Under the pieces are notes generated by a model. It saw only the letters and a program-made list of their open reading frames with translations. It had not been told where the DNA came from and ran no database searches. A DNA stretch of 64,000 nt, taken from contig CATNEN010000002.1 in NCBI GenBank assembly GCA_950097015.1, positions 3,224,001-3,288,000 of the forward strand, given 5' to 3'. The DNA comes from Macrostomum hystrix. Its lineage: Eukaryota; Animalia; Platyhelminthes. Every line of letters starts with the position of its first letter. Position 1 is the stretch's first letter. This document shows, piece by piece, positions 14,723 to 47,535 of this stretch. The translations under genes were made by a program, and so were the position numbers.

Positions 14723-15728
14723 CTACAAGGACTCGACTTCGTCACAGGAATATCCGTAATCCTCAAAGCAGCCAGCGCCATCAGCATCTGATCGCAGAGG
14801 CAGCTGTAGGGCTTCACCAAGCCTCTTGTCATGCGAGCAGTTGCAGACTCCAAGACGTACTTTCGAGGCCAGCATCCGACAATTCTTGTGGCAGTATTTC
14901 TGGCAAAACCTGCAAGCCAGGGAAGTCTGGTCGGAACTGCAGCTGCCGCATTCCGTTAGCAGCTGCATTGGAAATTGGTCCGATCCGCCGAACTCTCTGG
15001 TGCACGAGGAGTTTATCTTGACGCCCTTCAAGTTCATGCCGCTGTTTGAAACACGAATCTCAATTAAGTGCATCTCCGCGTCGAGTAGACCCAGCGATCT
15101 GAAAAAGGGCTATGAAGTTTTTATCGTTGATTTATCGCGATATTTTTATATAGAGAAATGAATCAACTTCTTGCCTGTCATCTTCAAATTTGAATGTACA
15201 CTGTGTCAACGAAGCAGATGACGTGGCCGCCCCCACCAATACGCTGCCAGCTAGCAGTCTTGGAATCTGCAGAACAGGTGCAGCTAGAGTCCAACGTGAT
15301 TGGTAGCTGACTCGCTTGCCGAGAATGACTTCCCGAACAAAGTGCTCGCAGTTGTTGGTGATTGGGTTGTAGCCAGCCTTGCCAACTCGGTAGAGGCACT
15401 CGAGAATCACTTCCGACCTCTTTCTTGCAGTGCAGCTGCAGCTGTACACCCGTATGGTGCACTTCTGCACAATGTCTCTGAAGTCGTCCAGTCTTACTGA
15501 TACCTTCGGTACCGTGTTGGCGTCTCCGGAGAGGTGGCAGAGCAATGGAATCGGCTCATTGTGCTCCGAGTTGTCTCGCTTTGGCCAGGCCCAGCCAAGG
15601 AAGATAGCGAAGTGGTAGAAGCCGATCCTATTGAAGCCGACAGCGGAGCCAGGAATGGCGGCCCTGATGGCATCTTCGGTCCTCTTCGAGTCAAAATCTT
15701 CGTATCCGTTTGTGAAGCCAACGCACAT
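14723..15728 (-). CDS. LRAT/PLAAT-like + UBR-type zinc finger, copy 1 (309 aa); exons 15728-15175 and 15098-14723, GC-AG intron
   Basis: HFAIFLG, LCHLSG and NNCEHF form the H-H-C triad. Exon 2 reads CTREFGG...CGSC...CRFCQKYCHKNC...CNC. The phase-2 intron is at the same position as in the paralogs. Confidence 0.85.
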
Positions 15729-17100
15729 TTTCTGTCTGTCTGTTTGTGTAGCGAAAATTCTAACTGCTTGGACAAAACGACTGCATCAACCGCCTTTATC
15801 TTTCTCTCCGTCTCAGCAACAGTCCTATAACGGACTAAGAGCCTAACAGATAATTCCACAGGCTCCAAGCTGTGCACTTCAGATTCAAGCTACTACCTAA
15901 ATCTAAAGATAACGCATCGCTTCTCAGCACACACAAGCTACGTGTTGATAGAATTCGCACAAAAGGTTGGCTCAGAAAAGTCTCTCTATTGAGCTTTGGA
16001 AGTCCGATGTAGCAATATGAATTCTGCCAGCAAGTTGCATGAAAGTTCTGACTTCCATTGTTCTGGACTACTCTGATACCCCTACTGTACTCACTAAACT
16101 CAATCCGAACTAAGCTCTATAGTCCTCTCTATTATGGCAATTTCAGGGCCTTCTGGTCCAGGTCTCTGGGGCTGTTGATTGGGCTTCGCATTCTAATCGG
16201 TCAGCATGAATATACTTTATTGAATACCGAAAGGACTTGACTGCCTCGCATTGACGATTGAATAAGAGGCCATTAAGCTACAAAGTTGGCTGGTCCGCGT
16301 GCAAAGCTAAAGCTTCAGTCTTGTACATATAGCACTGAATAAGGATTAGGAACTTCCGTAAAGCTGGTCACAGATAATATAGACATATATATATCATATA
16401 TACATATGTCGAGAGGGCTCATGGTTAACGTTTATCGGAGAAACTTCTGAACTTCTTCTTGTTGCTTCGTTGTAGAATTTCTCACTGCTAACTTCTATCT
16501 ATTCCTTTTTGTGATAACTAACTTTGTTATCTAATATTAATTGCGAAATGCTATCTCATTCAACCGCGAATTTTAACTCCCATATAGCCCAGGCAGCTCA
16601 GAGCAGTCGCAATCAGTTCACTTCCAAGTATTACGATGAGGGTGTCTGGGAGGATATAAAAGGTCTCATTCAGACGTATTCCACAATAGGAATCGTTCTC
16701 ACAATCGGTGATTTTAATGCAAGGACGAGATCAATGCAAGCAAATTGTGGTCCTCATTTCCGTAGAGTTCGGGAAAAAACAAACATGGCCTCCAACTCTT
16801 AGAAGTTTGAGTTTGAGTTTGAGTATATCCAATCCTTAGGCTTGGATATACTCCTAACCAATGGTCACTAGCATTGGTAAGCCCAATCTACAAGACTGGG
16901 TCTCGCAGTGATCCAAAAAAACTACAGACCAATAAGCGTCCAGCCAGCCATCGCAAGACTGTTTGCATCAATTATTTACGAGAAATTAGAAGCACACATC
17001 AAAGACCTGAACTTAGTATCGGCTAGTCAAATAGGAAACAGAAACTTCCGAAACTGCCGGACTTCCGATCACATTGCAACCCTATTGACATTAATTCATA

Positions 17101-17820: not shown

Positions 17821-18300
17821 CATAAAAAGAAGAAAATGAAAAGACCTTCCCATCTAGTTTTCTTTGATTTAAAAAGCGCCTTTGACATGGTTCACCACCC
17901 AACCCTAGTCACACGATTGAAGCAGTTGGTCGTGAACCCAGCAATAAAAAGTACCATTGAGAGTATGTACTCAAGCGCGAAATTTCATCTCAAGGTGTCA
18001 GAAGGCACAGCTACTGAGGCGTGTCGAATCACTAATGGCGTCAGGCAAGGATGCCCCCTATCTCCACTGCTATTCTCCCTATACATCGACCCGCTAAGCA
18101 GAATTCTATAAGACTCATTTCAAAGCCATACCTCCATATTGAATGAAGAAGTAAACAACTTGCTTTATTGTGACGATTTAGTCATTTTTGGTGTAGACCT
18201 GACAGAATTACAAAAAGGCCTCGACGAAGTAGCCGATTTTTGCAATACTCATAAATTAGAAATAAACATTGAGAAGACAAAGCTTCTGAGCTTCAATCTC

Positions 18301-18500
18301 CAATCTCCATCTCAATCTCCATCTCAATCTCCATCTCAATCTCCATCTCAATCTCCATCTCAATCTCCATCTCAATCTCCATCTCAATCTCCATCTCAAT
18401 CTCCATCTCAATCTCCATCTCAATCTCCATCTCAATCTCCATCTCAATCTCCATCTCAATCTCCATCTCAATCTCCATCTCAATCTCCATCTCAATCTCC
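18301..18500. repeat. 12-bp tandem repeat (CAATCTCCATCT), about 17 copies, inside the LINE RT
   Basis: Read directly; reads SQSP in the RT frame. Confidence 0.97.
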
Positions 18501-20312
18501 AACACAATCGAGCGTAGACAGTTTTTACATGGTCAACTGGTTGAACCCGTACAGCAGTGGAAATATCTTGGGTTTCACATGAACGTGAAGGAAATAATAG
18601 ATGCTCATTCCATAGAACTAGGCAAAAAATGGATATCCAATAATGCTTATGAGAAAGTTGGCGGGATTTCAGAGAGTAAAACACAAACAGCCTGTTTAGC
18701 ACAAACTGGGTCTTCTGAAAACTGGGTACTTGGGATCGGAACCTTTATCCTTTATCTCTCTATCGGAAAAGAGAGAATTACTAATTTTAGAATCTGCAAG
18801 TCGATTCTGCAAGTTAGTCCAAACACTGACAGCAATGGTGCTCGGTCTGAATTAGGAAGACTACCACTGTTATATAGTATTCAAAAAAGAAGCCTTCAAT
18901 ACTGGTCCTCAGTTCGGAGCCGACCAGACTCCATCATCGCGAAATTGGAGGCAGATACAGAATACAGCGATGTTGGCATTGGGGAAAAATGAGTAGTGAA
19001 GTAATGCGGAATTGTCAACAGACTAGAAAAACAGTCCATCAAAACGCACAGGGAGAACTTTGAGTCAGAGTTTCGAAGGCACTGGACTCAGAGGATGGGA
19101 AAATCAGCCAAGCTCAGCCACTTCTTCTACACGTTTAAGAAAGATTTCTTCCGAGAAAAGTACCTAACAATAATCTCAAACCCAGAACAAATGCGCACAA
19201 TGTCCCGATTTCGTCTAGGAAACCACAAACTGGCCTGTGAGACATTGCGCACTGTAAGAACGAAAATCACCTATGAAAACAGAACATGCCCAAAATGTAG
19301 AGTCGAGGTAGAGAACGAAACTCATATTCTCTTTAGATGCGATTGGTCCGTTTATGTTCCAATTAGAAATAAATTCATAGAGAAGGTGGCAGGTACTGTT
19401 CGAAATTTCGAAAGCCTAACAGCTGATGACAAAATTGTGTATTTAACGACACAGGAAAGCACAGAATTAACAGAAAGTTTTGTGGACTTCATAGAAAGCA
19501 TAATTAAAGCTAGATAAAAAGCCACTGCCCTGAGGCCCATAGTTAGAATGTTTAGAAACACAAGAGCTATTCTTCTTTCGGTCAGTTTTAATTTTCTAGT
19601 TAAATTTAAATATTTCATTTTTTGTTTTAATGCCTTTGTTATTTCAGAAATTTGTTTTTTTTCAAATATTTTACTCACCTAAAATTAATCTTATGCTGCT
19701 ACTGTTTTCCTATCGCCTTCTTTTTAAAAAATCGAATTGTTCAGCCTCAAACATAAAATTAACAAAAAAATCAGCACTCAATCGGCGTGCGCACCTCAAT
19801 AAAAAAATAATTATAGAAATTAACTAATAAAAATAATATATGTTAGTTAAGAAAATCATTAAAATACAAAATTGTACTTTAGCTTAAGTACTAAAAAGTC
19901 TGTCCTGCTTATTTTGCTAAACGTGGTGTATTGATAATTTTTTGCTACTCGTTAGGAATTATCGGAGCTGAGTATAATACAAGCACCAGGATACGCATTT
20001 AGGGACATACACAGGTGTGAACACACAGGTGTGAACATCTGCCCTGAATATTGTCAAACAGTTAGTTTACAGGCTCATTGTCTCTTGGAAGTTGACCCTC
20101 TCTAACTCACAGGCGCATAAATTGCAAAGCAATTCCGCAAGCCGTTCACCCAGTCTGCGCCCTAAATTAATGTGACCTCGGCACGGATTCGATCTTGCAG
20201 GAACTTCGGTGCAAAATCCAGACCCCTTAACCACTCCGCGACTCAACCCCCTTGGAATAGGTCTCCTTTGTTCACTTAGGGTTTGAGTAACTCAGTCACC
20301 ACAATAATAAGA

Positions 20313-21040: not shown

Positions 21041-23003
21041 ATGTGCGTCGGAGTTTACGACGAATTCGGGTCGTGGCGTTTCGACGCCGCCTTGAAGTCC
21101 ATGGTGCCTGGCTCCGCCGTGTCTTTCGATCGAGGATCTCTCCATCACTTCGCCATCTTCCTGGGCTGGGCCTGGCCTATGGGAGGCGGCTCGAACCCCC
21201 TGCCGCTGCTAGGACACCTGACAGGAAGTCCGCATACACGACCCCGCGCCTCTGTGCGTCTTGACGACGTCCGTGATGTTGTCCAGGGAAGCTCTGTGCG
21301 GGTGTACCGCTGCAGTTGCAGTTCAGCCAAGCGAGCTCGCGTCATCGAGGAGTGCCTTCGACGAGTTGGCGAAGAGGGATACAATCTGGTCACCAACAAC
21401 TGCGAGCACTTTGTGCGTTCGCTGATCGATGGCAGGAGCGTCAGCTACCAGACGCGTTGGACGATGGCGCTGCCAATCATCCAGCTGCCCAGACTGGTCA
21501 TTGGCATCACAGGGATAGTGGTGCCACTGCTGAGGTCGGGACAGAGGGCCCGGCTGCTGCAAGATGACAGGTGAGGCTTAGTGACTTGTGGTGCATTCTC
21601 TCATTTTCGGAAAAAATAACGTCACTTTTCTAGAAAAACCAAGGACGCTTCTTGTAATTTGCTAAAGTTGTGTACAGAGACCAGAGTAGGCATTGTAAAG
21701 AGAAATTAAACATCAAATGCTTTCGATCGAAAAGCTATACAATTAGTTTCGACAAGATCATTGAGATATCATGCATAAAAGAACTTATTTTGACAAACGG
21801 CTATACCGTTAAGGCTTTTGCCTCTCGCACCAAGGTCCCTGAGCTCGATTCTGCAGCGAGGCCACATTCATTTGAGGTGAAGCCACGGAGAAAAGGCTTG
21901 GGGGGCTTGTCGTGTGATTCACGCCCTTCAGGCACCGAACTGGAAGGCACAGTGAAACTGTACACTGCCTGAAAATGAGAAAGTCATGGCAGACGTGCAC
22001 ACCTGTATGCCTGCAGGTATGCCTGCGTAAAGCATCTGCGTGTGTCACCAAATGATATGCCGTTGCCCGCAGCCCTCCTGCAATTATTATTGCTATTATT
22101 AACTATTAACTATTATTAGCTATTATTAACAGCTGGACTGCCTAGCCATTTTGCCGCCTGTTTTTATGCCAAGAAGGTGGGTTTTGGCAGCGCCTGAATG
22201 CTAACAGCCTTGGGTGGTGACAGATTGGTTGACGGACAAGGCGATGGTGTCCTGTGGTTCAGCTGCGCCTAATATTTGGGCTTGATGAGTAAAATCGGAT
22301 AAATTCGCGTCAGGGTGTCCATAGTGGCTTAGTTCCACCTGTTGTAGCCGTTGAAGGTCCAGCAGCTCCGTCTAGATAAAGGTAGGCGACCACTGAAGAC
22401 GGCGATGATGCAGGCACATTCGGGTGACATGCTGATAAATTTCGAAGGCCTGGCAAGGCCGCACTGAGGCGCAGTGCTAATTTGTGTATAGGGGTGCATG
22501 AAATACACTAGCGCTTTTATAAAAAATCCGACCTTCAGCCAGAACCACTGAATATCTTGACGTTCGGAAAACCTGGCGACTTGATTCTTGTTTCAGAAGA
22601 TGCGCAAAAAAAAGTTGGCCCGTGTTCTTGAGTTTCGTCTGCTTGCGTTGCTCCATTCGGGTGCAGCACAAAAATTTATCAGGCAGTTCTTGGTAGTTCT
22701 ACTGTTAACTTATTTTGACTCCACAGCTACCTCGGCCTCATCGACCCCGAGTCCAGACTGCTGTTAATCCGGCCTCAGCACGGCGGCCTTAGAGTGGAAA
22801 TTCAGCGAGCCACGTGCTGCACCCGCTGCTTCACGGGCGCGAATTCACAGGCTGCGCAGACTCTGCACCACTGCATCGACTGCCGCCTGGTTGGAGCTTC
22901 GGCTGTGTGCGGAAACTGCGCCCGAAGCTGCCACAGGAACTGCTTGACTCGACGACTTCAGACTCGTTTGGTAGGATTCTGTAGCTGCCACTGCTGTCTT
23001 TAG
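21041..23003 (+). CDS. LRAT/PLAAT-like + UBR-type zinc finger, copy 2 (268 aa, the only copy on +); exons 21041-21570 and 22727-23003
   Basis: MCVG start; HHFAIFLG, LGHLTG and NNCEHF. Donor GACAG|GTGAGG, acceptor CCACAG|C in phase 2. Exon 2 reads CCTRCFTG...CIDC...CGNCARSCHRNC...FCSC. Confidence 0.85.
21800..22125 (+). mobile_element. SINE family B copy in the intron of copy 2
   Basis: GGTCCCTGAGCTCGATTCTGCAGCGAGGCCACATT...GCCCGCAGCCCTCCTGCAATTATTATT. Confidence 0.78.
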
Positions 23004-26849: not shown

Positions 26850-29800
26850 TTATTCATCGATTAGGTACCGTGCGAGCCGTTCTTCTCGATTGAAGAAAAC
26901 AGTTGCCTCATTGGCCATTGAAAATGCATTGAGTAGCTCTGGGTCAGCGCTTTCCGGCCTGTCGAAGGTGTCGAAAGGTTTGATTCTTCCCAGGTCAATC
27001 CACATCCTCGTAGGTGGCGTCTCAAAAAATTGTACGTGGATTCTCTGTCCTTTAGTGTGCGTTAAGGTGCATGGGTCATTGCAGACCATTGCTGGCCAAA
27101 AAGGATACGTTGAAAATTTCGCGTGGACGAGGTCGCCACAATTAAAAGATTTGCACATTTGCTCGTGCTTCTGCCGAAGGCTGTGCTTGATCTCACCGGC
27201 ATCTAGATTAACACCCTTTTTGTCGATTTTTGTTACTTCGGCTGGCTCCAGGGAAGCATCGGCAGGCTTTGGTGCTTTTCTGGGCTTCTCGCTGCTGGAT
27301 GAGTCGGACTGCCGCTTTCTAGAACTAGCCTTCTTACGCACTGCAGGCTTTGCAACACCTGACTCAGTAGAAATCACCTTGTCGGCATCTAGATTGGCAC
27401 AATTTTTGTCGATTTTTGTTACTTCGGCTGGCTCCAGGGAAGCATCGGCAGGCTTTGGTGCTTTTCTGGGCTTCTCGCTGCTGGATGAGTCGGACTGCCG
27501 CTTTCTAGAACTAGCCTTCTTACGCACTGCAGGCTTTGCAACACCTGACTCAGTAGAAATCACTTTGTCGGCATCTAGATTGGCACAATTTTTGTCGATT
27601 TTTGTTACTTCGGCTGGCTCCAGGGAAGCATCGGCAGGCTTTGGTGCTTTTCTGGGCTTCTCGCTGCTGGATGAGTCGGACTGCCGCTTTCTAGAACTAG
27701 CCTTCTTACGCACTGCAGGCTCTGCAACACCTGACTCAGTAGAAATCACCTTATCCGTCTCTAGATCATCGGCATCTAGATCAGTAACATGAACTTTGGT
27801 CTGATGGCCAAAAACCAAATCGAAGGTTGACCGCTTAGCATCCTGCACTGCTCGTGTGTGAGTTAGAGTGTTGGCCATGTACGACTTTAAGGCCTCAGCG
27901 CGACTATGGTTCATGCCATAACTAACAAGTCCTTGTTTCTCCACATCGTTGATGTTAATTTCTCGATTCTTGGACTCAAAAAAATGCCTCAAAGCATTTG
28001 CAGACATCCTGGTAATTGAGCCAAGATTGGAAAACTGTTTCCTACACACTCTTAAAAAAGTTGAGAATGAGTGGTTGGGTGCAGAGAAGCCAAAAAACTT
28101 GTCATCAGACTTAGCACCTGCTTTGATTCTGTGATCACCGTAGGCAAGAAGGAGGTCCTTAAATTCGTAAACGCTCACAAAAACTGGACCTTTCACAGCG
28201 GTCTTGTGATCATGCACTTCAAAAAGCGCTTCTGGGTCTGAGTTACTCTTCCACTCTTCGAATTCTTTAACTTTTGCATTGGAAACGATGTCCGCTCGGT
28301 TTGCGTTGCCGCGAGAAAACATGAAGTTCAGTCCCAGAAAAAGAACGCACTCTTTCGAGTCCAAGCAAGCCTCGGCTGCCGGTTTAAACGATTGGATCAC
28401 GTCGCAAATCATTTTTGCTTCTTCGACAGAGAGAAGATTTTTGTCTAATTTGAGTCGCCGCTCCACCTCTGCACGATTTTTGTCCCGCTGTCGCGACTTC
28501 CCGTAACAGGAACATGTAATTATGAACGAATCTAGCTGCGCACCCAGGCCTTCCGCTTCAATGAGTCCTAAATATGTTGATTTCAGGTACTCACCGAATC
28601 GAGTTAGTGCCGTTACATAAGGCTTGCAAGGATCGGCATGCGCATTGCTCTTTTCAGTCAAAAAAGAGGTGATACTAGTTCGGTTTGCCTCTTTGATAAG
28701 ATCCAAAATACTTTCTGCTTGAATGTGATTCAGAACTGCATTTAAGGCCCTTCTTAGTCCCAAAGCGGTGCTTCCTGCGTTCTTTGCTCCGGCGTAGCCT
28801 TGCAAATGTTCTTCGAAGTGCTTGATTGTTGGAAACCCAGGTGGAGCAGCTACCGGTGCTTTGTTCTGAGATGCTTGAATTTTCTTTTGCTGCCAAGACT
28901 GCTCTACGTGGTCTGCTGCCTTCTGCTTTTTTTCGTCCAACATCAACTTCTGTGACTCCTCCTTTGACAATTTATGCCAATTAGCAAGATGGCTAGCAAG
29001 GTATACAAACGGAATGTTGCATATTGGACAAGGACGACCAGCTGTGCCAGTTGAGACAATTGGCTGATTGTACTCTTTTGTCTCGTCAATGCAAAACTTT
29101 GCGCCCTTTTCGGCCAATTTTTCAGGATGACGACGCTGAAAATGCTCAGAAAATCGTGAGTTTTTAATGACGAATATTTCGCAATAAGGGCAAACGTAAT
29201 CACTGCCCTGTCTGTCTTGACAGTTTGTCTTGTCGGCAAGTTTTTTTGGCACCACTTCAACGATGTCGACAGTCGACTGAATCGACTGATGTCGTGCCTT
29301 GTTGAAAGCATACAACTCATCTCGGATGTCTTTCTTTGACTTTAAGAGGGTCTCCTCAAAGTGATAGCGCTGAAAGTGCTCTGCAATTCGTGAACCCACA
29401 ATTACATGTTTGGTAGGGTCCAGATAGCAGACGAATTCAGTAGTAGCTTTAGTCGTAGAACATCCTGAATCGTCTTTGGATAAGACACACTCATTCTGTT
29501 GATTGACAAACCGAATTACGTTCTCTTCATCGACTGTTGCCGAGGACTCCATCATGGGTCTTTGATCAGGAAGTAGAAACGGAAAATTATAATCATCATT
29601 CACCAGCTCTTGCAGCAAACTTGAAGCAAGAGCATCATCATCTTCGGACAGGTTGGCACCAGAAGCAGCTGCAGACAGCTCGTCACATCGAGGCAGGTTG
29701 GCACCAGAAGCAGCTTCAGACAGCTCGTCACATCGAGGCAGGTTGGCACCAGAAGCAGCTGCAGACAGCTCGTCACATCGAGGCAGGTTGGCACCAGAAG

Positions 29801-31445: not shown

Positions 31446-31492
31446 TCATGCGCCTTGAAGTCGTCAAAGCCGTTGGTGTATCCGACGCACAT
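31275..31492 (-). pseudogene. LRAT/PLAAT-like copy 3, 5' half only, fused to the 45-bp array
   Basis: MCVGYTNGFDDF...YHFAIFIGWGW...ICHFSSDIDASCQVP then the repeat. The NCEHF motif and the zinc-finger exon were not found downstream. Confidence 0.8.
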
Positions 31493-32490: not shown

Positions 32491-33445
32491 TCATCTCATT
32501 CTGCATTTCCTCTGGCGATTACCTTCCAGCTTCATGAGAGCTTCCATTCTGTTGTTGGCAAACTTGATTTGATCTGCACTGTACGCATCGCACACGGTGC
32601 ATTCGCAGATGCCGCTGCCCTCAAACTGGTAAAGATTTCCGCTGAGTCTCTGATGGCAGTGCGTCAAGCAGCTCCTACAGATCGCGAGTTCTGGCGCCAG
32701 TGTATTCTTGAGATCGTTTCCCAAGTAGCGCCTAGTGCAGGTTTCATTGACTGACGAGACCAAATTTAAGCCATGGTTGAATAGCTTCATCTCTATGAAG
32801 TTTCCTTCTGGGTCTAGAAGACCGAGGCTCCTGAAAGCGAAACACGAGCGTAAATCTAAGCATTTTGTCTTGCCATTTGCATTCAACAGATAAAGCTTAC
32901 TTGTTTTTTAGGCCTTTCTTGCCGCCCAACGAGAAAGAGGATGTTCTCGCTCCGCTTACTGACCCGCCGAATACTAGTCGAGGAATGGACAGCATTGGCA
33001 GCAAGAAGAACCAAAGAACTTGAAAGCTGAAAGGGTTTCCGTTAATGACCCATCGGACAAAGTGCTCGCAGTTATTGGTCACAATGTTGTAATCACGCCT
33101 TCCCACAAGGTCCAGGCATTGTTTAATAACTGTCGCTCTTTTTTGGACGCTGCAGCTACACTTGAAGACTCTAATAACTGAGCTTTCTACTACATCTCGA
33201 ACATCTTCGAGTCGAACAGACGCTTTCGGCTGCGTGCCTACCTCGCCAGAGAGGTGGCAGAGCAGCGGGATGGGCTGAGCAGACTCCTCATCCCGCGGCG
33301 GCAGTGCCCAACCCAAGAAGATGGCAAAGTGGTCCAGGGCGATTCGGTTAAAGCTGACAGCGGAGCCAGGTACCATGGACTTCAGTGCCAAATCTAAATT
33401 TAATGGCGAAAAATCTTCGAAACCGTTTGTAAAGCCGACGCACAT
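32491..33445 (-). CDS. LRAT/PLAAT-like + UBR-type zinc finger, copy 4 (294 aa); exons 33445-32901 and 32830-32491
   Basis: MCVG start; DHFAIFLG, LCHLSG and NNCEHF. 70-bp phase-2 GT-AG intron. The finger lacks the first CxxC pair. Confidence 0.85.
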
Positions 33446-34077
33446 TTTCAGTAGTAGAAATTTTTAAACTTTCAGATTCTGGCTTTTACGACTGAAGACT
33501 TCACAGAAACGTTGAAAGCTAGAAAAATTCCTCTATTTTTAAGTACACTAACTTATACTGCAGTATCATGCTTCAATCAGAATGGTTCCTAGTACGAAGT
33601 ACTTTGGGTACAGAAAATGTGGGTACAGTGCTTAGCGCGAGTGTAAACTAACTACTATTGTCTTTTTAGCCAATATAGTTCAGCTATGCAAAGCGAGTTG
33701 GACCTTGTTCCCAGGTAGAATATATCACACAATCTCATCCACCAGAGAGAGGCAGACACAGAGGGAGAGGGAACGTACATACTTATTTACGAGCTATATA
33801 GAAATCTCGATTCGGCAACTTACAAAGAAATTTAAAAGTTGTTAAGAAATCTCACCTAAAATCTTTTACTTACATAATGTGCGAGATTTCAAAGTGTCAG
33901 ATTTCTAAATCTTGTCAAAGCTAACACTTGCAGCATCCTCAAATTTCTTGACGTCTTGGAATTTAACTCAAGTCGTTGAAATGCTTCAGCAAAGAAAATT
34001 TGCAAACGAAAAAATTTCAGCCTTATCAAATTTCGAGGCTGACTGATTGGGTTAGAAATCTTTACGAATACTATCAG

Positions 34078-34388: not shown

Positions 34389-36145
34389 CCTTACTATCAG
34401 ATAGCTGCTACCGATTTTAACGCCGAGATTTCAAGTGCAATCAGCTTCGCTTTTTCAAACTGGTCAGAAAATTGGCAGCTTTTCCACATTTTACTACCAA
34501 GCTGGCGTTGTGTGTTTGACAAATGCAGCAGGTATCCATCCGACTGACTAAGAGATCTATTTTCATCGCCTAAATGACACAAAACTACTGACGGAAATTG
34601 GTACCTATTTTTCCTCTTTGTTTTTTTGGCGACGACTGTCTCGTTCTAGCTTTTGTTTTGGCATCGATTTTTTGTGTTTATTTATTGTGTTTATTTTTAC
34701 TTACGTAAAAACATATTTTAGATACTACTGACAGCCGTCACCGACGTTGCGTTGACGATTTTTTATGTAGAAAACTAATTTTAATTTAGAACACTTTCAC
34801 TGTACCTTGGAGGTTGGTCCTAAAGAGCGTAAATTGCACGACAAGCCCCCAAGCCTTCTCTCTGCGGCTGCGCCACAATTTAATGTGGCCTCGCCGCGGA
34901 ATCGAGCTCAGGGACATTGGTGTGGGAGGCAGACGTTTACCCTCTGCCACTGACCCCAAAGCACCCATAGGAAGCAACATACACCGCATGGCTTTAGCTG
35001 CATGGTAAGCATAATTCATAGTTTATGTAGCAATTGCTTGATCAACATTTTGTGAGGCTGTGTTTTTAAGTTCGCGAAAAATAGGCTTTTTTAAACTTTC
35101 TATCGAGAGTCCAAGTATGATTTCTTGGAACGATAAGTAAAATAATAAATATGTTATTAAGGACATGCTGCGCCAACTCATTCTGTACAGCAAACCAGCT
35201 TTGCTCGCAGAGTATTTATTTTCTTTCATTCGGCACAAGGCATGCAGATATGAGACCGGGTCTGCTCCGCAAGCTTTCTTCTGTCGCACCGAAGTTTCCA
35301 CAAATAATAACTCATTGTATTGAGTGCGGCCTTACATCTGGGTGCGATAGCTCTTGCTCACATTTTGCATGGCAACCCTGTGCGGCTCCGACCATTCGCA
35401 CTCGCCCACGCTGTTCACTGTGCGCCAGAGTGCTCACTAAAGCAACTAAGAGCTTATTTTCGAGTCTGCCCTAGAATGTAGATGAGCTCGTATATGGCAA
35501 TGGCGCATTTGCGTCATTGGAAACCATATTGCGAATGAACAAGATCAGGAAATGCTCGGCTATGTAACTACTGTGGCAGTGCACCCTGAGCTTGTCTGTA
35601 TAAGGTGAATGTTAATTATTGATGGTCTATTTTAACTTTAATGTTTGCCTTCACTGCTTTTGACTGGGAATTGGAATTAACAGGATTCTGAACACAGGAG
35701 AACTTGCAAGACATGCAAGACATTATGAAAATCTGTCGAAGTATATTTGAGTCTAATAAATAAGCATTCTGTTTAAAATGTACAGGGCACAACAGTAAAA
35801 CCAGCGATTCGGGTAGCAATATGTTATGTCAATTGTGACATGGCAATCTCTGCGTACGACTACATAGTCCGAAGTGACCGCTTTAAAATAGTCAACGGAG
35901 GCAAGCAGCATTGAAAGTGCATCACAGCAAGTAATGTTTTCCAGCGCTTAAACTAAGCAACCAGTAAGACCTTCGATAATGGAGAAAGACAAATAGAAAT
36001 CTCTGCACAAAATCATATTGCTTTTTAACTCTGGCCTGACGTAACCAGACAGGCGCAATGCGCAAAATAAAATCTTGATTACCAGGTGCTTGTTCTGATT
36101 CGCTCTCTACTAGTTGTCGTTGGGGGGTCTTGGAAAACACGCGGT

Positions 36146-37069
36146 CTACGTGAGGACCCTGCTTGACGACCCGTCGCGCTCTGGACGCGGGGATTGGCGC
36201 GAAGCTTCTCCCTTCAGAGCGTGGGAGCATTGGCACAAGCCTTCGGACACGTCTTGGCAGGCAATGACAGTGCAGTTCTTGTGGCAGTACTTCTGGCAAG
36301 GCTTGCAGACTAAGGCGCCGCGGCAGTTGCAGCACTTGAACAAGGCTTGCCTCGAGAAGGCGAACTCGCAAGTGCATGTGGAATTCAAGCGAACTCCTTG
36401 AAGCTGGAGGCCTCCGTTTGACACGAGAATCTCCACGAGGTCCATTTCCGGGTTGAGAAGGCCTAGCGATCTAGAAATAAGGCATGCACTATTATGGTGT
36501 GTCGCAGAGCTTTGCGCGATCGGTAGATAATAAAATTACCTGTTTCCCTCTAAACTGGAAATGCACATTGTTGATAGCGAGCAGCAGGCGGTGGCCAGCG
36601 CGCCGATGATCATTCCCGGAAGCTTGGACAGCGGCGAAGCCCGCATTCGGCGGATCTGGTAGCTGACGCTTTCTCCGCAGATCACTTGCCGGACAAAGTG
36701 CTCGCAGTTGTTGCTCATAATGTTGAACCCCATTGAGCCAACTCGGTACAGACATTCCAGAATCACCTCAGATCGCTTGCTAGCTGTGCAGGTGCAGCTG
36801 TACACCCGGATAGTGCAGTTCTGCACAATATCCCTAAAGTCGTCGAGTCGCACAGAAGCGATGGGTTTGGTGTTCGGGTCGCCAGACAGGTGGCAGAGGA
36901 GGGGAATGGGCTCCTCGCCGGCGCCTCGCGGCCAGGCCCAGCCCAGGAAGATGGCGTAGTGTGAAAAGCCGACCCTGTTGAAGCTGACTGCGGACCCGGG
37001 CACCAAGGCGTTGATGGCGTATTTGAATCTTCGAAAATCTTGGTAGCCGTGCTTGAACCCGACGCACAT
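36146..37069 (-). CDS. LRAT/PLAAT-like + UBR-type zinc finger, copy 5 (284 aa); exons 37069-36540 and 36470-36146
   Basis: MCVG start with an in-frame TGA 18 nt upstream; SHYAIFLG, LCHLSG and NNCEHF. 69-bp phase-2 intron. Finger CTCEF...CCNC...CKPCQKYCHKNC...CQC. Confidence 0.87.
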
Positions 37070-37815
37070 GATGTGCGGTGCTCGTCAGTGCTCAAATTAC
37101 TGCTAGCTGAAACAAAGCAACTATTTTTTATGTCACGTGGGTGTGCAGTGGTTATATAAAAGTGAATAACTAGTCAAGCTGCATGGACGGCTTGTCGTGT
37201 CTGGCATTGTGCAGCGCGTCTTACTCTCTATCCCAGCGCACGGAAAACCGAGGTACTTGAAGCGTGTATCAGGGCAGGGGGCACAGCGGTCGCCAAGCAT
37301 TCTGAGAACAGTCAATACAGGGAGTGAGCCTCTGGGTCAGAGAAGGCAGGGGATGCAGGGCGTGCCCGTGAGAGCTGGACTTTGCGACTGTACTCAGCAC
37401 TCAGAGGTTGAGTGATGTAAACTCATAAAGGATCTCAGGCTTGTTGTCGAGAAGGCGACACATTGGAGGGAAGAGGTACCTTTGCTTGCGTGCGAAGGCT
37501 CACAATAGTAAAGCAGTTGCTTTAATTTTGTAGCAGGACACTGAAACTAGTCCCAAAAAATTGTGCGTGTACATGCAACCGTTTTTGAGTAGAAAAATTT
37601 GTTTGCGACGCAGTTAACAATAGGTTAGAGTGACCAGGCCTTTGAGTAGTTTCCATCATCATCTCAGATTCAAACTGCAACTTGATAGAGATTGATGCTC
37701 CGTGTTAAGGGTTGGCGTCTTCATAATAGAGGTGCATAATTCTGTGCACCTGTCTACACCTGTCTTCATTTTCTTCCGTTCAGTCATTATGTGCGCGAAG
37801 CTTGAGTGGACTACG

Positions 37816-39578: not shown

Positions 39579-39654
39579 TTTTAACAGTAAAGAAAAACAT
39601 GTCAATAGAATAGCTGAGTACAGTTGGGATCGAATCAAAGTTGCATGAAGTTGA

Positions 39655-42930: not shown

Positions 42931-42977
42931 ACTATGTAACCCAGTTGTAGGCACATATTTGTCCCGCAAGGTCTCAG

Positions 42978-44138
42978 CTAAGCTCGGGTTCGAGTATTGC
43001 TGTCTTCCAGGGCCTCAATTTGTCGATGCTGGCAGTCGCAGTAGCCGTTCGGGCTCTCGGCTTCCTTCAACCTGCGGATACGGCAGTCAGCGTGACAGTC
43101 GGCCGCACAGTGTCGGCAGATGTATTTGGGATCAACAATGCCGCAGCTGAGGCACTCCAGCAGCACTTGACAGGAGCTGAGGTTCTCGCCGGTGAAATCG
43201 CGACTGCACCTGGGACTGACGCGGATCTTTGTGCCCAGGGGCCGGAAGGTGACCTCAAGCATTTCCAGCTTGGCGGATACGAGGCCAAGGAGCCTGAGAG
43301 TGAGTTGGCAGTACATGCGGCAGTAAGTGGTTGATAGCAATTCACAGGAGCTGTCCCCTGTACACAAATACGTAATCGCTACTGCAGCCCATCATTACTT
43401 GACAGTGGCGTAGCCAGGATTTTTGTCTAGGGGGGCCGCCCATTTTGGGACGTCACTACCACGGGGGCGTCACTAGTTTCATCAATTCCCCAGCTACTCT
43501 CACCAGCTCTGATCCCAATCAGCCAGTGGATCTGGCAGTTCATCCAAGATGCTGCACTGCGGCTCAGAGGCGGAGACAGCTCGTCGCAATCTTTTGATGA
43601 GCCAGGACGCTCCGGCAGTCAACTCAGTGCCGAGAAGAGAGGCCGAAATCCAGCCAGTCATTCGAAGAAATTTCTGCTTAACCTGCTCAACAACGACTGG
43701 CTGTTCGGCAACGGCGACAATCTGCCTGATCAGAGCAGAGCAGCAACCGCCAGCTAGACTCCGGTAGCGTAGGAAGCACTGGGAGATCCTGGCATCCCGG
43801 TCCTCAGCTGAACAATCACACTGATAAACTCTCAGAGCGGTGGATCGCAGCGCCAGGTCGTGAAAGCTAGCCAGACGCTGCTCGCCGCCGATCAAGTGGC
43901 TAACAAGGTGCACGGGCTCCAGCTCCACAGTTCCCGCTTTGACCAGCCAGGCCTGGCCGAGGTAGAGACCAAAGTGACGATGGCAGGTGAGGTCGCCATC
44001 GGATGCATCGGCTTGCAACACGAAACTCACCGGAGCGCCGACTGAGACTCTGATCAACGCCTGGGCAATGCCGGTGTACGGTCGGCTGGTCAAGTCAAAG
44101 TCACAGCAGCGCTGCCTTTCCAGAGAGTCGAGACACAT
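42978..44138 (-). CDS. Divergent LRAT/PLAAT-like + UBR-type zinc finger, copy 6 (316 aa); exons 44138-43504 and 43293-42978
   Basis: MCLD start; RHFGLYLG, VSHLIG and LRVYQCDCS; GGCCSALIR in place of NNCEHFVR. Same phase-2 intron. Finger CSRDFTG...CLSC...CRHCAADCHADC...YCDC. Confidence 0.75.
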
Positions 44139-44969
44139 CTTTAGATTTGAAACCAGAATTGCGTAAAATTGTCTTTTCCGAGCAACTTCGAGAAAGCCGC
44201 AACAAATACGCGACGATGAATACACGTAGCTTTGCACAATGCCAATTAGGAACCACGCAAACAAGATGCAGAAATTCTGTCTGTGTTTTTCTGGAATTTT
44301 CCTGGAAATTTTCACTAGAAAGACGCGCCGAAAATAAGTTGCTTTTTGTGAGACAGTGAGACTCAAATTTAATTTTCGTATCAGAGCTTGTGTTTTATTT
44401 TTAGCTAACCCAAACAACTTGCTTCGAGTTTGACTGTTTATTTGCTTCTTATAACTCAAGCAGCTTTCGGTTTTATCAACTTTGCGTCCCGTGATTTATG
44501 AACTTTGGCGTCCGAAATACGTCCGAAAGACGTCCCGAAATATGACAAAATCTTAAAATAAATATATAATTTACATGAGAAACTTCTACCTGTAGATTAG
44601 CAGGTGCCACTTCACGCATACAGCATTGCGGAATAGGAGGAAAATATTGATGACAGACGGAATCAATGAGGAACAGTGACAGTGAAAGGTGGAGTGAGCT
44701 GGAATGAAAGGTAGACTGAGGGGTAGAGTGAGGTAGAGTGAGAGGTAGATTAAGAGGTAGAGTGAAAGGAAAAATGAGTGAGGCGACCTTCAGGAGACCG
44801 GCCTACCCCTTCCCATCACCTACAAAAGAGATTCTCAACCCTTTAGAGACGAAAAGGTGATCTTGTATACCAATAACACTGCAAGACTGATTAAAACAGT
44901 TAGTTTTTATTACAATTGTACTTTTACGGTTGCTTTAAGTTCGATCTAATCATACATGGAGCTCGCGAT

Positions 44970-47535
44970 CTAGTTGAGTTTTTGAGAACCCAGACTCCCA
45001 GCTTCATTGGTTAAGGGCACCTGTTTGCCCGAGCTGGTGGGGCGCATCTTGTGCTGGCAGTCGCAGAATCCCGGGCCGTCGTTGAAGCCACGCGTGTCGC
45101 AGTCGACGTGGCACATCAGCACGCAGGCTCGGCAGACGACCTTGTCGCCGGTGATGCCGCAGCTGAGGCAGTGGAAGAGTTCCTGCTCGATGCTCTGGTT
45201 AGGCCCTGTGTAAACCTTGGTGCAGCACGGGTTCACATCGACCGTGGCAGAAAGTCCCGATCCGTTGACTCCGATCTCAATTAGATCCATGTCGGGATTG
45301 ATCAGGCCTAGGGATCTGCCGGAGTAGTTTTTCTAGATCAACGTAGGGCTAGGAACAATAAGAATTGGTAATCATTTTTTTACTTTGCGCTACAGGGTCC
45401 CTGGCAGCTCAATCTCCTGGCCAGTCAAGACACCATCGCTAGGCTTGTCTGGATCCCTGGCAGCTCAATCTCCTGGCCAGTCAAGACACCATCGCTAGGC
45501 TTGTCTGGATCCCTGGCAGCTCAATCTCCTGGCCAGTCAAGACACCATCGCTAGGCTTGTCTGGATCCCTGGCAGCTCAATCTCCTGGCCAGTCAAGACA
45601 CCATCGCTAGGCTTGTCTGGATCCCTGGCAGCTCAATCTCCTGGCCAGTCAAGACACCATCGCTAGGCTTGTCTGGATCCCTGGCAGCTCAATCTCCTGG
45701 CCAGTCAAGACACCATCGCTAGGCTTGTCTGGATCCCTGGCAGCTCAATCTCCTGGCCAGTCAAGACACCATCGCTAGGCTTGTCTGGATCCCTGGCAGC
45801 TCAATCTCCTGGCCAGTCAAGACACCATCGCTAGGCTTGTCTGGATCCCTGGCAGCTCAATCTCCTGGCCAGTCAAGACACCATCGCTAGGCTTGTCTGG
45901 ATCCCTGGCAGCTCAATCTCCTGGCCAGTCAAGACACCATCGCTAGGCTTGTCTGGATCCCTGGCAGCTCAATCTCCTGGCCAGTCAAGACACCATCGCT
46001 AGGCTTGTCTGGATCCCTGGCAGCTCAATCTCCTGGCCAGTCAAGACACCATCGCTAGGCTTGTAGGGTCCCTGGCAGCTCAATCTCCTGGCCAGTCAAG
46101 ACACCATCGCTAGGCTTGTCTGGATCCCTGGCAGCTCAATCTCCTGGCCAGTCAAGACACCATCGCTAGGCTTGTAGGGTCCCTGGCAGCTCAATCTCCT
46201 GGCCAGTCAAGACACCATCGCTAGGCTTGTCTGGATCCCTGGCAGCTCAATCTCCTGGCCAGTCAAGACACCATCGCTAGGCTTGTCTGGATCCCTGGCA
46301 GCTCAATCTCCTGGCCAGTCAAGACACCATCGCTAGGCTTGTCTGGATCCCTGGCAGCTCAATCTCCTGGCCAGTCAAGACACCATCGCTAGGCTTGTAG
46401 GGTCCCTGGCAGCTCAATCTCCTGGCCAGTCAAGACACCATCGCTAGGCTTGTCTGGATCCCTGGCAGCTCAATCTCCTGGCCAGTCAAGACACCATCGC
46501 TAGGCTTGTCTGGATCCCTGGCAGCTCAATCTCCTGGCCAGTCAAGACACCATCGCTAGGCTTGTCTGGATCCCTGGCAGCTCAATCTCCTGGCCAGTCA
46601 AGACACCATCGCTAGGCTTGTCTGGATCCCCAGTCACAAGCTTCCATGTGAATGAGCTCGCAGTCAGCCAATTGCCAAACATCCAGAGCGTCAGTCCCGT
46701 GGCCCTCCAAGGCTCAGGAATATCTAACCTCACTGGTCACACGGCTGCTAAGCTATAGGCACTGCTTCCTTCGAGGGTCCCTCCGGAGTGCATGGACTTT
46801 GTCCCCTTTGTGCGAAGCGGGTCTTCAGGCATTAGCGATATGGGCGACTCCCGCTTCCTCGCTGCGTGTACGGACCACCCAACAGCTTAAGTCAAGTAAG
46901 TCGAGTTGTGGGCCACATACATGTACAGCCAGTGACAGTTGCGTCTGATACAATGTCCCAATAGAAAGCAAAGCCAGGCAGCAAATCAAAACTCACCCGA
47001 TCTTCGTCAGTCCGATGGCCACGCAGGAGCTGGACGAAGTGATGGAGCCTCCAAGTGGCGCACCGATTAGCAGCCTGGGCAGCTGCACAATCGGCGCGGC
47101 GAATGTCCAGAAGGCCTGGTAGCTGAAGCTGCGATTGTTGATGACGTGGCGCACGAAGTGCTCGCAGTTGTTCGTCACCAGGTTGTAGCCCTCCTCGCCG
47201 ACCCGCGCCAGGCAGTCGCGAATGACGCGCATCCGTTTGGCCGGCTGGCAGCGACACTTGTACACGCGCACAGTCGAGTTCTGCACCACGTCGCGCAGAT
47301 CGTCCAGTCGCACGGAGGCCATCGGGACGGTTCTGGCGTCGCCAGAGAAGTGGCAGACTAGCGGGATAGGCTCGTCTAGAGTCTCCTTGGGCCAGGCCAG
47401 GCCCAGGTAGATAGCGAAGTGGAACAGGCCGATCCGATCGAAGCTGATGGCGGAGCCCGGTGTCATGGCTGCCACGGCGTCTTTAACCTTCCAGTAGGGG
47501 AAGTCTTTGTAGCCGTTGGTGAAGCCGACGCACAT
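44970..47535 (-). CDS. LRAT/PLAAT-like + UBR-type zinc finger, copy 7 (294 aa); exons 47535-46997 and 45315-44970
   Basis: MCVG start; FHFAIYLG, VCHFSG and NNCEHF. 1.68-kb phase-2 intron. Finger CCTKVYTG...EQELFHCLSC...CRACVLMCHVDC...FCDC. Confidence 0.85.
45396..46630. repeat. 56-bp tandem repeat, about 22 copies, in the intron of copy 7
   Basis: Unit CTGGCAGCTCAATCTCCTGGCCAGTCAAGACACCATCGCTAGGCTTGTCTGGATCC; three 55-bp variants. Confidence 0.97.

What the first reader, a model, noticed from the sequence alone, without database searches (positions are those of the whole stretch)
14723..47535. All seven paralogs start Met-Cys and the six complete ones carry a UBR-like domain: possible N-degron or oxygen-sensing switch
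Seen in sequence: the ATGs at 15728, 21041, 31492, 33445, 37069 and 47535 give MCVG, and the most divergent copy (44138) still gives MCLD. Copies 4 and 5 have in-frame stops 21 and 18 nt upstream, which supports these as true starts. Established knowledge: Met-Cys proteins lose Met, and the exposed Cys can be oxidised (ADO/PCO, NO) and arginylated by ATE1 to form an N-degron read by UBR boxes. Inference: the protein might read its own or a partner's modified N-terminus as an O2/NO-gated switch. Alternatives are that Cys2 is an acylation site or a structural residue. Caveat: several UBR boxes, including that of FBXO11, do not bind N-degrons.
Basis: inference. Interest (0 to 1): 0.75.

Follow-up and report, generated by a model that had tools for sequence, protein, structure and literature searches.

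The report
Conserved Met-Cys start on flatworm LRAT–UBR genes
A cluster of seven flatworm genes for PLAAT/LRAT-type lipid enzymes fused to a UBR-type zinc finger really does start Met-Cys in every copy, and that cysteine is as conserved as the catalytic residues, but it goes with the enzyme domain rather than the finger, so the proposed self-reading oxygen switch is unlikely.

Summary
All seven exon-1 copies begin ATG-TGY at the first in-frame ATG. Spliced RNA contigs for copies 4 and 5 start 38-59 nt upstream, show no upstream exon, and contain the in-frame stops. The genes are two-exon Macrostomum-type genes. Exon 1 is an LRAT/PLAAT (NlpC/P60) domain. Exon 2 is a true but divergent UBR-box homolog (profile E 2.5e-8 to the UBR4 box); copy 4's finger has lost several zinc ligands.

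Cys2 is invariant in 15 homologs and is one of only 12 invariant columns out of 163. It sits at position 2 even though the length of the N-terminal tail varies.

- Met-Cys also heads relatives that have no finger: M. lignano LRAT-caspase fusions and an LRAT-TM transcript.
- The Asp that anchors an N-degron's alpha-amine in UBR boxes survives in only 2 of 10 family fingers, against 72% of unrelated UBR-type fingers.

Cys2 is therefore most likely a position-dependent N-terminal signal of the LRAT module, handled by general cell machinery. It could be a Cys/Arg N-degron read in trans (about 0.3) or a lipidation site (about 0.25-0.3). Self-reading by the finger is about 0.04.

The scan also noted this same cluster as s1-392115. 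Interest is moderate.

The parts
15175..15728 (-). Copy 1, exon 1: MCVGFTNGYEDF N-terminal tail, LRAT/PLAAT domain (His in HFAIFLG, Cys in NCEHF) and a hydrophobic linker
   Evidence: Pfam LRAT E 2.1e-10. Predicted GC-AG phase-2 donor at 15175|15174. Ortholog P0001 is 74% identical.
14723..15098 (-). Copy 1, exon 2: beta-rich region plus a UBR-type zinc finger with 11 ligands (CNC at the Asp site); stop codon at 14723
21041..21570 (+). Copy 2, exon 1 (MCVGVYDEF; LRAT domain)
   Evidence: GT donor AG|gtgagg. Groups with M. lignano P0003.
22727..23003 (+). Copy 2, exon 2: UBR-type finger ending CSCHCCL, after a predicted 1156-nt intron
31259..31492 (-). Copy 3: 5' fragment only (MCVGYTNGFDDF..., about 78 codons). 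It runs into a 45-nt x 36 minisatellite, and no exon 2 was found.
   Evidence: tblastn, tandem repeat 29649-31280, ORFs.
32901..33504 (-). Copy 4, exon 1 with a 59-nt 5' UTR (ATG at 33445; in-frame TAA at -21 lies inside the UTR)
   Evidence: RNA contigs end at 33504 in four runs; the joint skips 70 nt with GT..AG on the minus strand. Pfam LRAT E 6.9e-14.
32491..32830 (-). Copy 4, exon 2: degenerate UBR-type finger (CxxC pair and two further aligned ligand positions lost); transcribed
   Evidence: No Pfam hit.
36540..37117 (-). Copy 5, exon 1 with a 38-48-nt 5' UTR (ATG at 37069; in-frame TGA at -18 lies inside the UTR)
   Evidence: A single spliced contig in each of four runs covers 35715-36470 + 36540-37117.
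35715..36470 (-). Copy 5, exon 2 (UBR-type finger; stop codon at 36146) plus 3' UTR
43504..44138 (-). Copy 6, exon 1: most divergent copy (MCLDS...). The His is kept, the NCEHF motif is replaced by GGCCSAL, and the N-terminal tail is longer.
   Evidence: Branch length 4.9 substitutions per site.
42978..43293 (-). Copy 6, exon 2: UBR-type finger that keeps CDC
   Evidence: Pfam zf-UBR E 5.6e-5.
46997..47535 (-). Copy 7, exon 1 (MCVGFTNGYKDF; LRAT domain)
   Evidence: Pfam LRAT E 1.7e-13.
44970..45315 (-). Copy 7, exon 2: UBR-type finger that keeps CDC. The predicted 1681-nt intron holds a 56-nt x 22 minisatellite.
26850..31445 (-). Not part of the family: a 1531-codon ORF plus minisatellite that cuts copy 3 short

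Best explanation
The cluster encodes cytosolic PLAAT/LRAT-type thiol acyltransferase/phospholipase enzymes carrying a lineage-specific C-terminal UBR-type zinc finger. The Met-Cys start is genuine. After removal of the initiator Met (expected when residue 2 is Cys), every paralog would expose a free N-terminal Cys on a flexible tip of about six residues ahead of the enzyme domain. That Cys is a position-dependent signal inherited with the LRAT module from ancestors that had no finger. I propose it is acted on by the cell's general machinery, not by the protein's own finger. The single most likely mechanism is a Cys/Arg N-degron read in trans: oxidation by an ADO-type dioxygenase or NO, arginylation by ATE1, then capture by canonical UBR ligases. 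This would keep a membrane-damaging enzyme short-lived unless oxygen is low, possibly competing with acylation of the same Cys as in RGS4/RGS16 (RGS behaviour is from my own knowledge). Shown here: the true start, the conservation, the positional constraint, the link to the LRAT domain and the loss of the N-degron pocket in the finger. Inferred: Met removal, oxidation, arginylation and degradation.
For: True start: RNA contigs and in-frame stops. Conservation: Cys2 is invariant in 15 homologs, one of 12 invariant columns out of 163, alongside the catalytic His and Cys. It is kept on very long branches: c6 4.9, P0019 4.5 and the caspase fusions above 2 substitutions per site. The duplications predate the split from M. 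lignano (pairs c2/P0003 and c4/P0004, clade c1+c5/P0001+P0002). Positional constraint: the distance from Cys2 to the conserved PG varies with indels in the aligned N-terminal tails while the Cys stays at residue 2. The PLAAT core begins only at model residues 15-22, and residues 1-6 have pLDDT below 50. Link to the LRAT module: Met-Cys also heads finger-less LRAT-caspase proteins (P0006; P0007 from Met32) and a polyadenylated LRAT-TM transcript with upstream in-frame stops. Degron compatibility: hydrophobic residues (Phe, Val, Ile) after Cys are enriched among ATE1-dependent substrates, and MC- starts are otherwise under-represented (PMC12377780). NatA disfavours hydrophobic residues after Nt-Cys (PMC11199558), so the amine probably stays free.
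Against: There is no experimental or proteomic evidence for Met removal, oxidation, arginylation or instability. ADO in vitro prefers basic or aromatic residues after Cys, not Val, and dislikes acidic residues, which occur at positions 10-11 (PMC11199558). The presence of ADO and ATE1 in this genome was not tested. Residues 5-12 (FTNGYxDF) are also conserved and modelled as ordered, so part of the N-terminal conservation is structural. Lipidation explains the data about equally well. RNA support exists for only two of the seven copies.
Confidence: 0.3

Rival explanations
1. Cys2 is an N-terminal lipid anchor, S-acylated by a DHHC enzyme or by the protein's own LRAT active site, that holds an interfacial phospholipid enzyme on membranes.
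For: 14 of 158 retrieved LRAT relatives start MG, several with classic myristoylation-like motifs (MGNTESV, MGGNSSK, MGSNVSV), so N-terminal lipid anchors recur in this superfamily. The post-LRAT hydrophobic segment is a clear TM in P0019 (KD 2.43) but only borderline in the finger-bearing paralogs (1.3-2.0, with a conserved Pro-Arg inside), so another anchor would be useful. PLAAT enzymes carry acyl groups as a Cys thioester, and H-rev107 alters H-RAS palmitoylation (PMC4012743). Val-Gly-Phe follows the Cys.
Against: There is a single Cys and no basic or amphipathic patch; the downstream sequence is acidic or polar (TNGYEDF), unlike typical N-terminal palmitoylation sites. S-acylation does not require residue 2 exactly, yet the Cys never drifts. 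P0019 has both MC and a true TM.
Confidence: 0.27
2. Cys2 is a structural, metal-binding or redox partner within the LRAT domain, for example together with the family-specific invariant CxC (RVYxCxC) or the catalytic Cys. Being at residue 2 would then be incidental.
For: Besides Cys2, the invariant cysteines are the CxC pair and the catalytic Cys. The CxC motif is absent from PLAAT1-5-like relatives. The neighbouring residues 7-12 are ordered in the model.
Against: Variable spacing to the domain and pLDDT below 50 for residues 1-6. No paralog or ortholog has gained an N-terminal extension, as would be tolerated for an internal ligand. No fourth conserved ligand is evident.
Confidence: 0.15
3. 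One reading: the UBR-like finger binds the protein's own (or a paralog's) oxidised and arginylated N-terminus, making an O2/NO-gated intramolecular switch.
For: The finger is a genuine UBR-box homolog: profile E 2.5e-8 to the UBR4 box and 1.6e-5 to FBXO11; VIA Z 7.1 to UBR6 and 5.8 to UBR4. Copies 6 and 7 keep the CDC Asp. The MC start is real and conserved.
Against: The alpha-amine-anchoring Asp is kept in only 2 of 10 family fingers, against 68 of 95 (72%) unrelated UBR-type fingers. MC is equally conserved without any finger (P0006, P0007, P0019). The copy 4/P0004 finger is degenerate yet MCVG is kept and the gene is expressed.
Confidence: 0.04
4. Cys2 has no function of its own: it is inherited sequence kept by chance, by gene conversion among tandem copies, or by constraints on the translation-start context.
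For: The copies are tandem paralogs. The first 24 nt are very similar in c1, c3, c4 and c7.
Against: Synonymous variation in codons 3-5. Retention across species and across branches of more than 4 substitutions per site, and in different architectures. Only 7% of columns are invariant.
Confidence: 0.08

Closest known systems
PLAAT/HRASLS1-5 and LRAT (LRAT family, NlpC/P60 superfamily; Pfam PF04970)
   Same: Same fold and catalytic layout: a His in the second strand and a Cys in NCEHF at a helix N-terminus. Pfam 41-52 bits against a cut-off of 24.3. Model of ortholog P0001 against HRASLS2 Z 10.1 and PLAAT3 Z 9.8 (about 100 residues, rmsd about 3 A). A hydrophobic segment follows the domain, as in the PLAATs.
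   Different: A 15-22-residue N-terminal extension with an invariant Cys2. A family-specific invariant CxC. The post-domain hydrophobic segment is only borderline as a TM. A beta-rich region plus a UBR-type finger is added C-terminally. Copy 6 lacks NCEHF.
UBR boxes of UBR4, FBXO11/UBR6, UBR5 and UBR1/2 (Pfam PF02207)
   Same: Same zinc-ligand pattern, C...CxxC...CxxCxxxCHxxC...CxC.H (11 ligands, three-zinc type). Profile E 2.5e-8 (UBR4) and 1.6e-5 (FBXO11). Structural Z 7.1, 5.8 and 5.1.
   Different: The Asp in C-D-C that anchors the N-degron alpha-amine is not conserved (N, S, E, Q, D, D and R, Q, R, H). Single sequences fall below Pfam's gathering score. The finger is attached to a lipid enzyme rather than an E3 ligase. 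The copy 4 lineage has lost one zinc site.
Cys/Arg N-degron substrates (RGS4/5/16, IL-32, plant ERF-VII)
   Same: A Met-Cys start conserved across paralogs and species, with a bulky non-acidic residue after the Cys. RGS4/16 Cys2 is also a palmitoylation site (from my own knowledge).
   Different: Val rather than a basic or aromatic residue follows the Cys. There is no experimental evidence of oxidation, arginylation or instability. The protein class is different (a lipid enzyme).
Bacterial apolipoprotein N-acyltransferase Lnt and Hedgehog acyltransferase (mechanistic analogy only)
   Same: Lnt moves an acyl chain from a phospholipid to its active-site Cys thioester and then to the alpha-amine of an N-terminal Cys (PMC6971011 abstract). 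This is the same chemistry an LRAT-type Cys could in principle perform on its own N-terminal Cys.
   Different: Unrelated folds. Those reactions act in trans on secreted or membrane substrates. Nothing here shows self-acylation.

Membership tests
LRAT/PLAAT family (PF04970, NlpC/P60) | Pfam LRAT model above its gathering score | tested here: met
   41.4, 52.6 and 51.4 bits for copies 1, 4 and 7 against a cut-off of 24.3. Copy 6 alone gave no Pfam hit, but it aligns to the family.
LRAT/PLAAT family (PF04970, NlpC/P60) | Catalytic His and Cys (NCEHF motif) | tested here: met
   His and NCEHF are present in copies 1, 2, 4, 5 and 7 and in all M. lignano orthologs. Copy 6 keeps the His and an aligned Cys but the motif is GGCCSAL.
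LRAT/PLAAT family (PF04970, NlpC/P60) | PLAAT-like three-dimensional fold | tested here: met
   AF2 model of ortholog P0001 (pLDDT 72): HRASLS2 Z 10.1, PLAAT3 Z 9.8, Foldseek probability 1.0. The window proteins themselves were not folded, because joined exons were left out.
LRAT/PLAAT family (PF04970, NlpC/P60) | C-terminal transmembrane anchor after the catalytic domain | tested here: inconclusive
   Kyte-Doolittle 19-residue maxima are 1.3-2.0 with a conserved Pro-Arg inside, against 2.43 for P0019. AF2 pLDDT is below 50 for residues 154-175.
LRAT/PLAAT family (PF04970, NlpC/P60) | Phospholipase A / acyltransferase activity | not testable with these tools
   Needs an enzyme assay.
UBR box (PF02207) | Pfam zf-UBR above its gathering score | tested here: not met
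   Best scores are 22.1-23.6 bits against a cut-off of 25.2. Five of 10 family fingers hit at E below 1; copy 4 gave none.
UBR box (PF02207) | Significant profile-level homology to solved UBR boxes | tested here: met
   Profile of 10 fingers: UBR4 box 8j9r E 2.5e-8, FBXO11 7yrb E 1.6e-5, UBR1 E 8.7e-4.
UBR box (PF02207) | Three-zinc Cys/His ligand set | tested here: met
   All 11 ligand positions are filled in copies 1, 2, 5, 6 and 7. Copy 4 lacks the CxxC pair and two further aligned positions, and its ortholog P0004 shows nearly the same loss.
UBR box (PF02207) | UBR-box fold | tested here: met
   Model residues about 207-275: UBR6 Z 7.1, UBR4 Z 5.8 (65 aligned, rmsd 2.9), UBR5 Z 5.1. Foldseek rmsd 2.2-2.5.
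N-recognin (N-degron-binding UBR box) | Asp in C-D-C that hydrogen-bonds the ligand's alpha-amino group (UBR2 D150, UBR4 D1715; PMC10687169) | tested here: not met
   N, S, E, Q, D, D in copies 1, 2, 4, 5, 6, 7 and R, Q, R, H in M. lignano. It is Asp in 68 of 95 unrelated UBR-type fingers.
N-recognin (N-degron-binding UBR box) | Binding of Arg, Lys, His or bulky hydrophobic N-terminal peptides | not testable with these tools
   Needs ITC or thermal shift with isolated fingers.
Cys/Arg N-degron substrate | Cys is residue 2 of the translated protein | tested here: met
   It follows the first in-frame ATG in all seven copies. For copies 4 and 5, RNA 5' ends and in-frame UTR stops confirm it.
Cys/Arg N-degron substrate | Sequence after Cys permissive for ADO/ATE1 and poor for NatA | tested here: inconclusive
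   Val, Leu or Met follow the Cys. These are enriched among ATE1-dependent substrates (PMC12377780) but are not ADO's preferred basic or aromatic residues (PMC11199558).
Cys/Arg N-degron substrate | O2-, ADO- and ATE1-dependent instability; the pathway enzymes present in the organism | not tested
   No reference sequence for ADO or ATE1 was available from the tools, and only one 64-kb window of the genome was readable.

The most novel reading that the evidence does not exclude
The LRAT-type active site lipidates its own N-terminal cysteine. The acyl chain would be taken from a phospholipid onto the catalytic Cys, passed to the Cys2 thiol and fixed on the free alpha-amine by an S-to-N shift. 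This is Lnt- or Hedgehog-like chemistry done in cis, and it would give a self-installing membrane anchor. It would explain why the Cys must sit exactly at residue 2, why it travels with the LRAT domain into different architectures (UBR finger, caspase, TM), and why it is as conserved as the catalytic residues.
Probability: 0.08. Interest if true: 0.8.

Novelty: new variant of a known kind. Interest (0 to 1): 0.45.

Why it matters
If Cys2 is a degron, these would be a new enzyme class of oxygen- or NO-controlled Cys/Arg N-degron substrates in an intertidal flatworm that is a regeneration model. That would link oxygen sensing to membrane-remodelling PLAAT-type enzymes and, through the LRAT-caspase fusions, possibly to cell death. 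If it is a lipidation site, especially a self-installed one, it would be a new way of anchoring LRAT-family enzymes. The LRAT + UBR-box architecture itself is unannotated: UniProt lists only 'LRAT domain' or 'phorbol-ester/DAG-type'. A full-library HMMER search found it complete only in Macrostomum. The work also shows that a UBR-type finger can be kept while losing the N-degron pocket, which cautions against reading 'UBR box' as 'N-recognin'.

Tried and rejected
- Upstream coding exons or a spliced-leader AUG extending the ORF: rejected for copies 4 and 5, because the RNA contigs end 38-59 nt upstream with in-frame stops and carry no extra leader letters.
- A splice acceptor directly before the ATG: there is no consistent AG.
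- Gene conversion as the sole cause of conservation: rejected by synonymous variation and by conservation across species and architectures.
- The finger as a C1 or PHD domain: C1_1 reaches only E 0.025 and PHD fingers E 0.07 or worse, against 2.5e-8 for UBR4.
- Wider relatives of the finger-less MC protein P0019: the word search found only bacterial LRAT-like proteins with no N-terminal tail.
- ESM Atlas look-alikes: only generic LRAT clusters from annelids and molluscs.
- Literature search for LRAT + 'UBR box' + Macrostomum: nothing. Literature search for ADO or ATE1 in flatworms: nothing useful.
- A finger downstream of the MCVGFTNGYYDF gene on ENA contig L001: not found by tblastn or a strict regex.
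- Model coordinates are not exposed by the tools, so the distance from Cys2 to the active site or to the finger could not be measured.
- Joined spliced models of the window copies were never searched or folded. Exons were used separately, and full-length M. lignano orthologs served as proxies.

Full report
**What is in the window.** The stretch 14723-47535 holds seven copies of one gene family (tblastn). Exon 1 is a Pfam LRAT domain (PF04970; E 2e-10 to 7e-14, above the gathering score). It carries the catalytic His (HFAIFLG) and Cys (NCEHF) of PLAAT/HRASLS/LRAT enzymes. Six copies have a second exon encoding a Cys/His-rich finger that scores just under Pfam's zf-UBR cut-off (22-23.6 bits against 25.2).

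All six introns sit at the same place and in phase 2, just before x-LGL(L/I)(D/N)P. The gene models are:

| Copy | Exon 1 | Exon 2 | Note |
|---|---|---|---|
| c1 | 15728-15175 | 15098-14723 | predicted GC-AG intron of 76 nt |
| c2 | 21041-21570 | 22727-23003 | plus strand |
| c4 | 33445-32901 | 32830-32491 | RNA-confirmed |
| c5 | 37069-36540 | 36470-36146 | RNA-confirmed |
| c6 | 44138-43504 | 43293-42978 | most divergent |
| c7 | 47535-46997 | 45315-44970 | long intron |
| c3 | 31492-~31259 | none | 5' fragment |

Copy 3 runs into a 45-nt x 36 minisatellite and a 1531-codon ORF. The closest database proteins are LRAT-domain proteins of the flatworm Macrostomum lignano (51-74% identity). The window therefore comes from a related macrostomid.

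**Checking the observation.**
- Every copy starts ATG-TGY at the first in-frame ATG. Six give MCVG and copy 6 gives MCLD.
- Similarity between paralogs begins exactly at the ATG, and the upstream DNA is unrelated.
- Four runs of one study hold spliced contigs, so they are RNA in effect. Copy 5 is one contig covering 35715-36470 + 36540-37117 (69-nt GT..AG intron). Copy 4 covers 32300-32829 and ~32900-33504 (70-nt intron).
- The 5' ends lie 38-59 nt upstream of the ATG. No upstream exon or leader sequence is attached, no upstream ATG exists, and the in-frame stops at -21 and -18 lie within the transcribed UTR. A spliced-leader AUG therefore could not extend the frame.
- Only copies 4 and 5 could be tested, because one read-laying run was allowed.

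**How conserved is Cys2?**
- All five M. lignano homologs start MCVG or MCVR.
- A profile search of 1.84 billion representatives found complete LRAT+finger proteins only in M. lignano.
- The same search also retrieved LRAT proteins with other architectures that still begin Met-Cys. These are M. lignano 'caspase-8-like' LRAT-caspase fusions (P0006 MCMQ; P0007 MCLK from Met32), an ENA contig gene (MCVGFTNGYYDF, stop 9 nt upstream), and a polyadenylated metatranscriptome transcript encoding LRAT plus a clear TM helix (P0019, MCVD, upstream in-frame stops).
- In a 15-sequence alignment only 12 of 163 scored columns are invariant: Met1, Cys2, the catalytic His and Cys, a family-specific CxC and a few others.
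- Cys2 survives on branches of 4.5-4.9 substitutions per site.
- The tree pairs c2 with P0003 and c4 with P0004, and places c1 and c5 with P0001 and P0002. The duplications are therefore older than the two species.
- Codons 3-5 vary synonymously.
- The spacing from Cys2 to the domain varies through indels in the N-terminal tail, but the Cys never leaves residue 2. This argues for a function that needs the N-terminal position itself.

**The finger.**
- A profile of ten fingers matches the solved UBR4 box at E 2.5e-8, FBXO11/UBR6 at 1.6e-5 and UBR1/UBR2 at about 1e-3.
- An AlphaFold model of ortholog P0001 (pLDDT 72, pTM 0.73) matches PLAAT/HRASLS structures (Z 9.5-10.1). Separately it matches the UBR6, UBR4 and UBR5 boxes (Z 7.1, 5.8, 5.1). 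It is a real UBR-box homolog of the UBR4/FBXO11 subtype.
- In N-degron-binding boxes the ligand's alpha-amino group is held by the Asp of C-D-C (UBR2 D150, UBR4 D1715; PMC10687169). At that aligned position the window fingers have N, S, E, Q, D, D and the M. lignano fingers have R, Q, R, H. By contrast, 68 of 95 unrelated UBR-type fingers retrieved in the same search have Asp.
- Copy 4 and its ortholog P0004 have lost the CxxC pair and further aligned ligand positions, yet copy 4 is transcribed and keeps MCVG.

**Interpretation.** This is disfavoured because Cys2 is conserved independently of the finger and because the finger's N-degron pocket is not conserved. AlphaFold leaves residues 1-6 unplaced (pLDDT below 50), which is weak additional evidence.

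What remains is a strongly conserved, position-dependent N-terminal Cys belonging to the LRAT module. Two readings are about equally supported.

1. *A Cys/Arg N-degron read in trans by canonical UBR ligases.*
   - For: MC-Val/Phe/Ile motifs are enriched among ATE1-dependent substrates, and MC- starts are otherwise selected against (PMC12377780).
   - For: NatA disfavours hydrophobic residues after Cys (PMC11199558).
   - For: a strict residue-2 requirement fits chemistry that needs the free amino-terminal Cys.
2. *N-terminal lipidation.*
   - For: 14 of 158 LRAT relatives carry myristoylation-like MG starts.
   - For: the post-domain hydrophobic segment is only a borderline TM in the finger-bearing paralogs.
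   - For: PLAAT chemistry runs through a Cys thioester, and H-rev107 affects H-RAS palmitoylation (PMC4012743).
   - Against: the local sequence is acidic or polar, and S-acylation does not need residue 2.

A structural, metal or redox role with the invariant CxC is a third possibility. I commit to the trans N-degron as the single most likely mechanism, at about 0.3 and only slightly ahead of lipidation. The cis switch gets about 0.04. The most novel reading not excluded is self-acylation of Cys2 by the protein's own LRAT active site (about 0.08).

**Comparison with known families.** The proteins are members of the LRAT/PLAAT family: Pfam, the catalytic residues and the fold were all tested and met. 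Their finger is a UBR-box homolog by profile and fold, but it fails the defining feature of an N-recognin. No paper in the searchable library joins LRAT with a UBR box or with Macrostomum. Database names give only 'LRAT domain-containing' or 'phorbol-ester/DAG-type'. The architecture, and the invariant N-terminal Cys of this LRAT subfamily, appear to be undescribed. I file it as a new variant of a known kind.

**Limits.**
- Exons were used by reference, and M. lignano full-length orthologs stood in.
- The tools do not expose model coordinates, so no distances could be measured.
- The presence of ADO and ATE1 in this genome was not tested.
- RNA support covers two copies, from one study.
- Earlier scan notes list this same cluster (s1-392115). 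They also list several other LRAT expansions in this genome, including an LRAT domain fused to about a dozen CxxC pairs 0.8 Mb away (s1-394584). Those were not checked here.

Noticed in passing
P0006, P0007 (M. lignano): LRAT domain fused N-terminally to a caspase p20/p10 domain (QACRG active site), named 'caspase-8-like' in UniProt. The LRAT module sits where a caspase prodomain would normally be, and it also begins Met-Cys.
   Followed up: partly
window 26850-31445 (-) and 29649-31280: Copy 3 is cut after about 78 codons by a 45-nt x 36 minisatellite.
   Followed up: partly
window 39657-42931; 45398-46630: Two large minisatellites: a 47-nt x 70 array between copies 5 and 6, and a 56-nt x 22 array inside the predicted 1681-nt intron of copy 7. 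They account for the strong GC/AT skew at 40-44 kb.
   Followed up: no
window 15099-15174 (-): The intron of copy 1 is predicted to use a GC donor (AG|gcaaga) instead of GT. The position and phase match the other copies and ortholog P0001, but no RNA was laid on it.
   Followed up: partly
window 32491-32830 (-) and P0004: The copy 4 finger and its M. lignano ortholog show nearly the same loss of zinc ligands (the CxxC pair plus a further aligned position). This is an old, maintained degenerate finger in an expressed gene.
   Followed up: yes
window 43504-44138 (-): Copy 6 has replaced NCEHF with GGCCSAL and has a longer N-terminal tail containing a CC pair. It nevertheless keeps Met-Cys, the catalytic His and the CDC Asp in its finger. 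It may be a pseudo-enzyme or a neofunctionalised copy.
   Followed up: partly
exon 1 of all copies (e.g. window 15430-15450 region, RVYSCSC): A CxC motif (RVYxCxC) is invariant in the Met-Cys LRAT subfamily and absent from PLAAT-like relatives. Its role is unknown.
   Followed up: no
window 18139-19517 (+): Reverse-transcriptase-like ORF fragments (a LINE remnant) containing a 12-nt x 18 repeat that encodes (SPSQ)n, lying between copies 1 and 2.
   Followed up: no
P0011, P0012, P0013, P0027: Proteins made of 4-20 tandem UBR-type fingers, mostly with CDC (P0011 is 1423 aa with about 20 fingers). They come from unnamed metagenomic eukaryotes and appear to be an undescribed multi-UBR-finger repeat class.
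   Followed up: no
model of P0001 vs PDB 8iuf chain E7: The best structural match by Z (10.3, 145 residues aligned) is a subunit of the Euglena gracilis respiratory supercomplex. This suggests an LRAT-like fold in that subunit.
   Followed up: no
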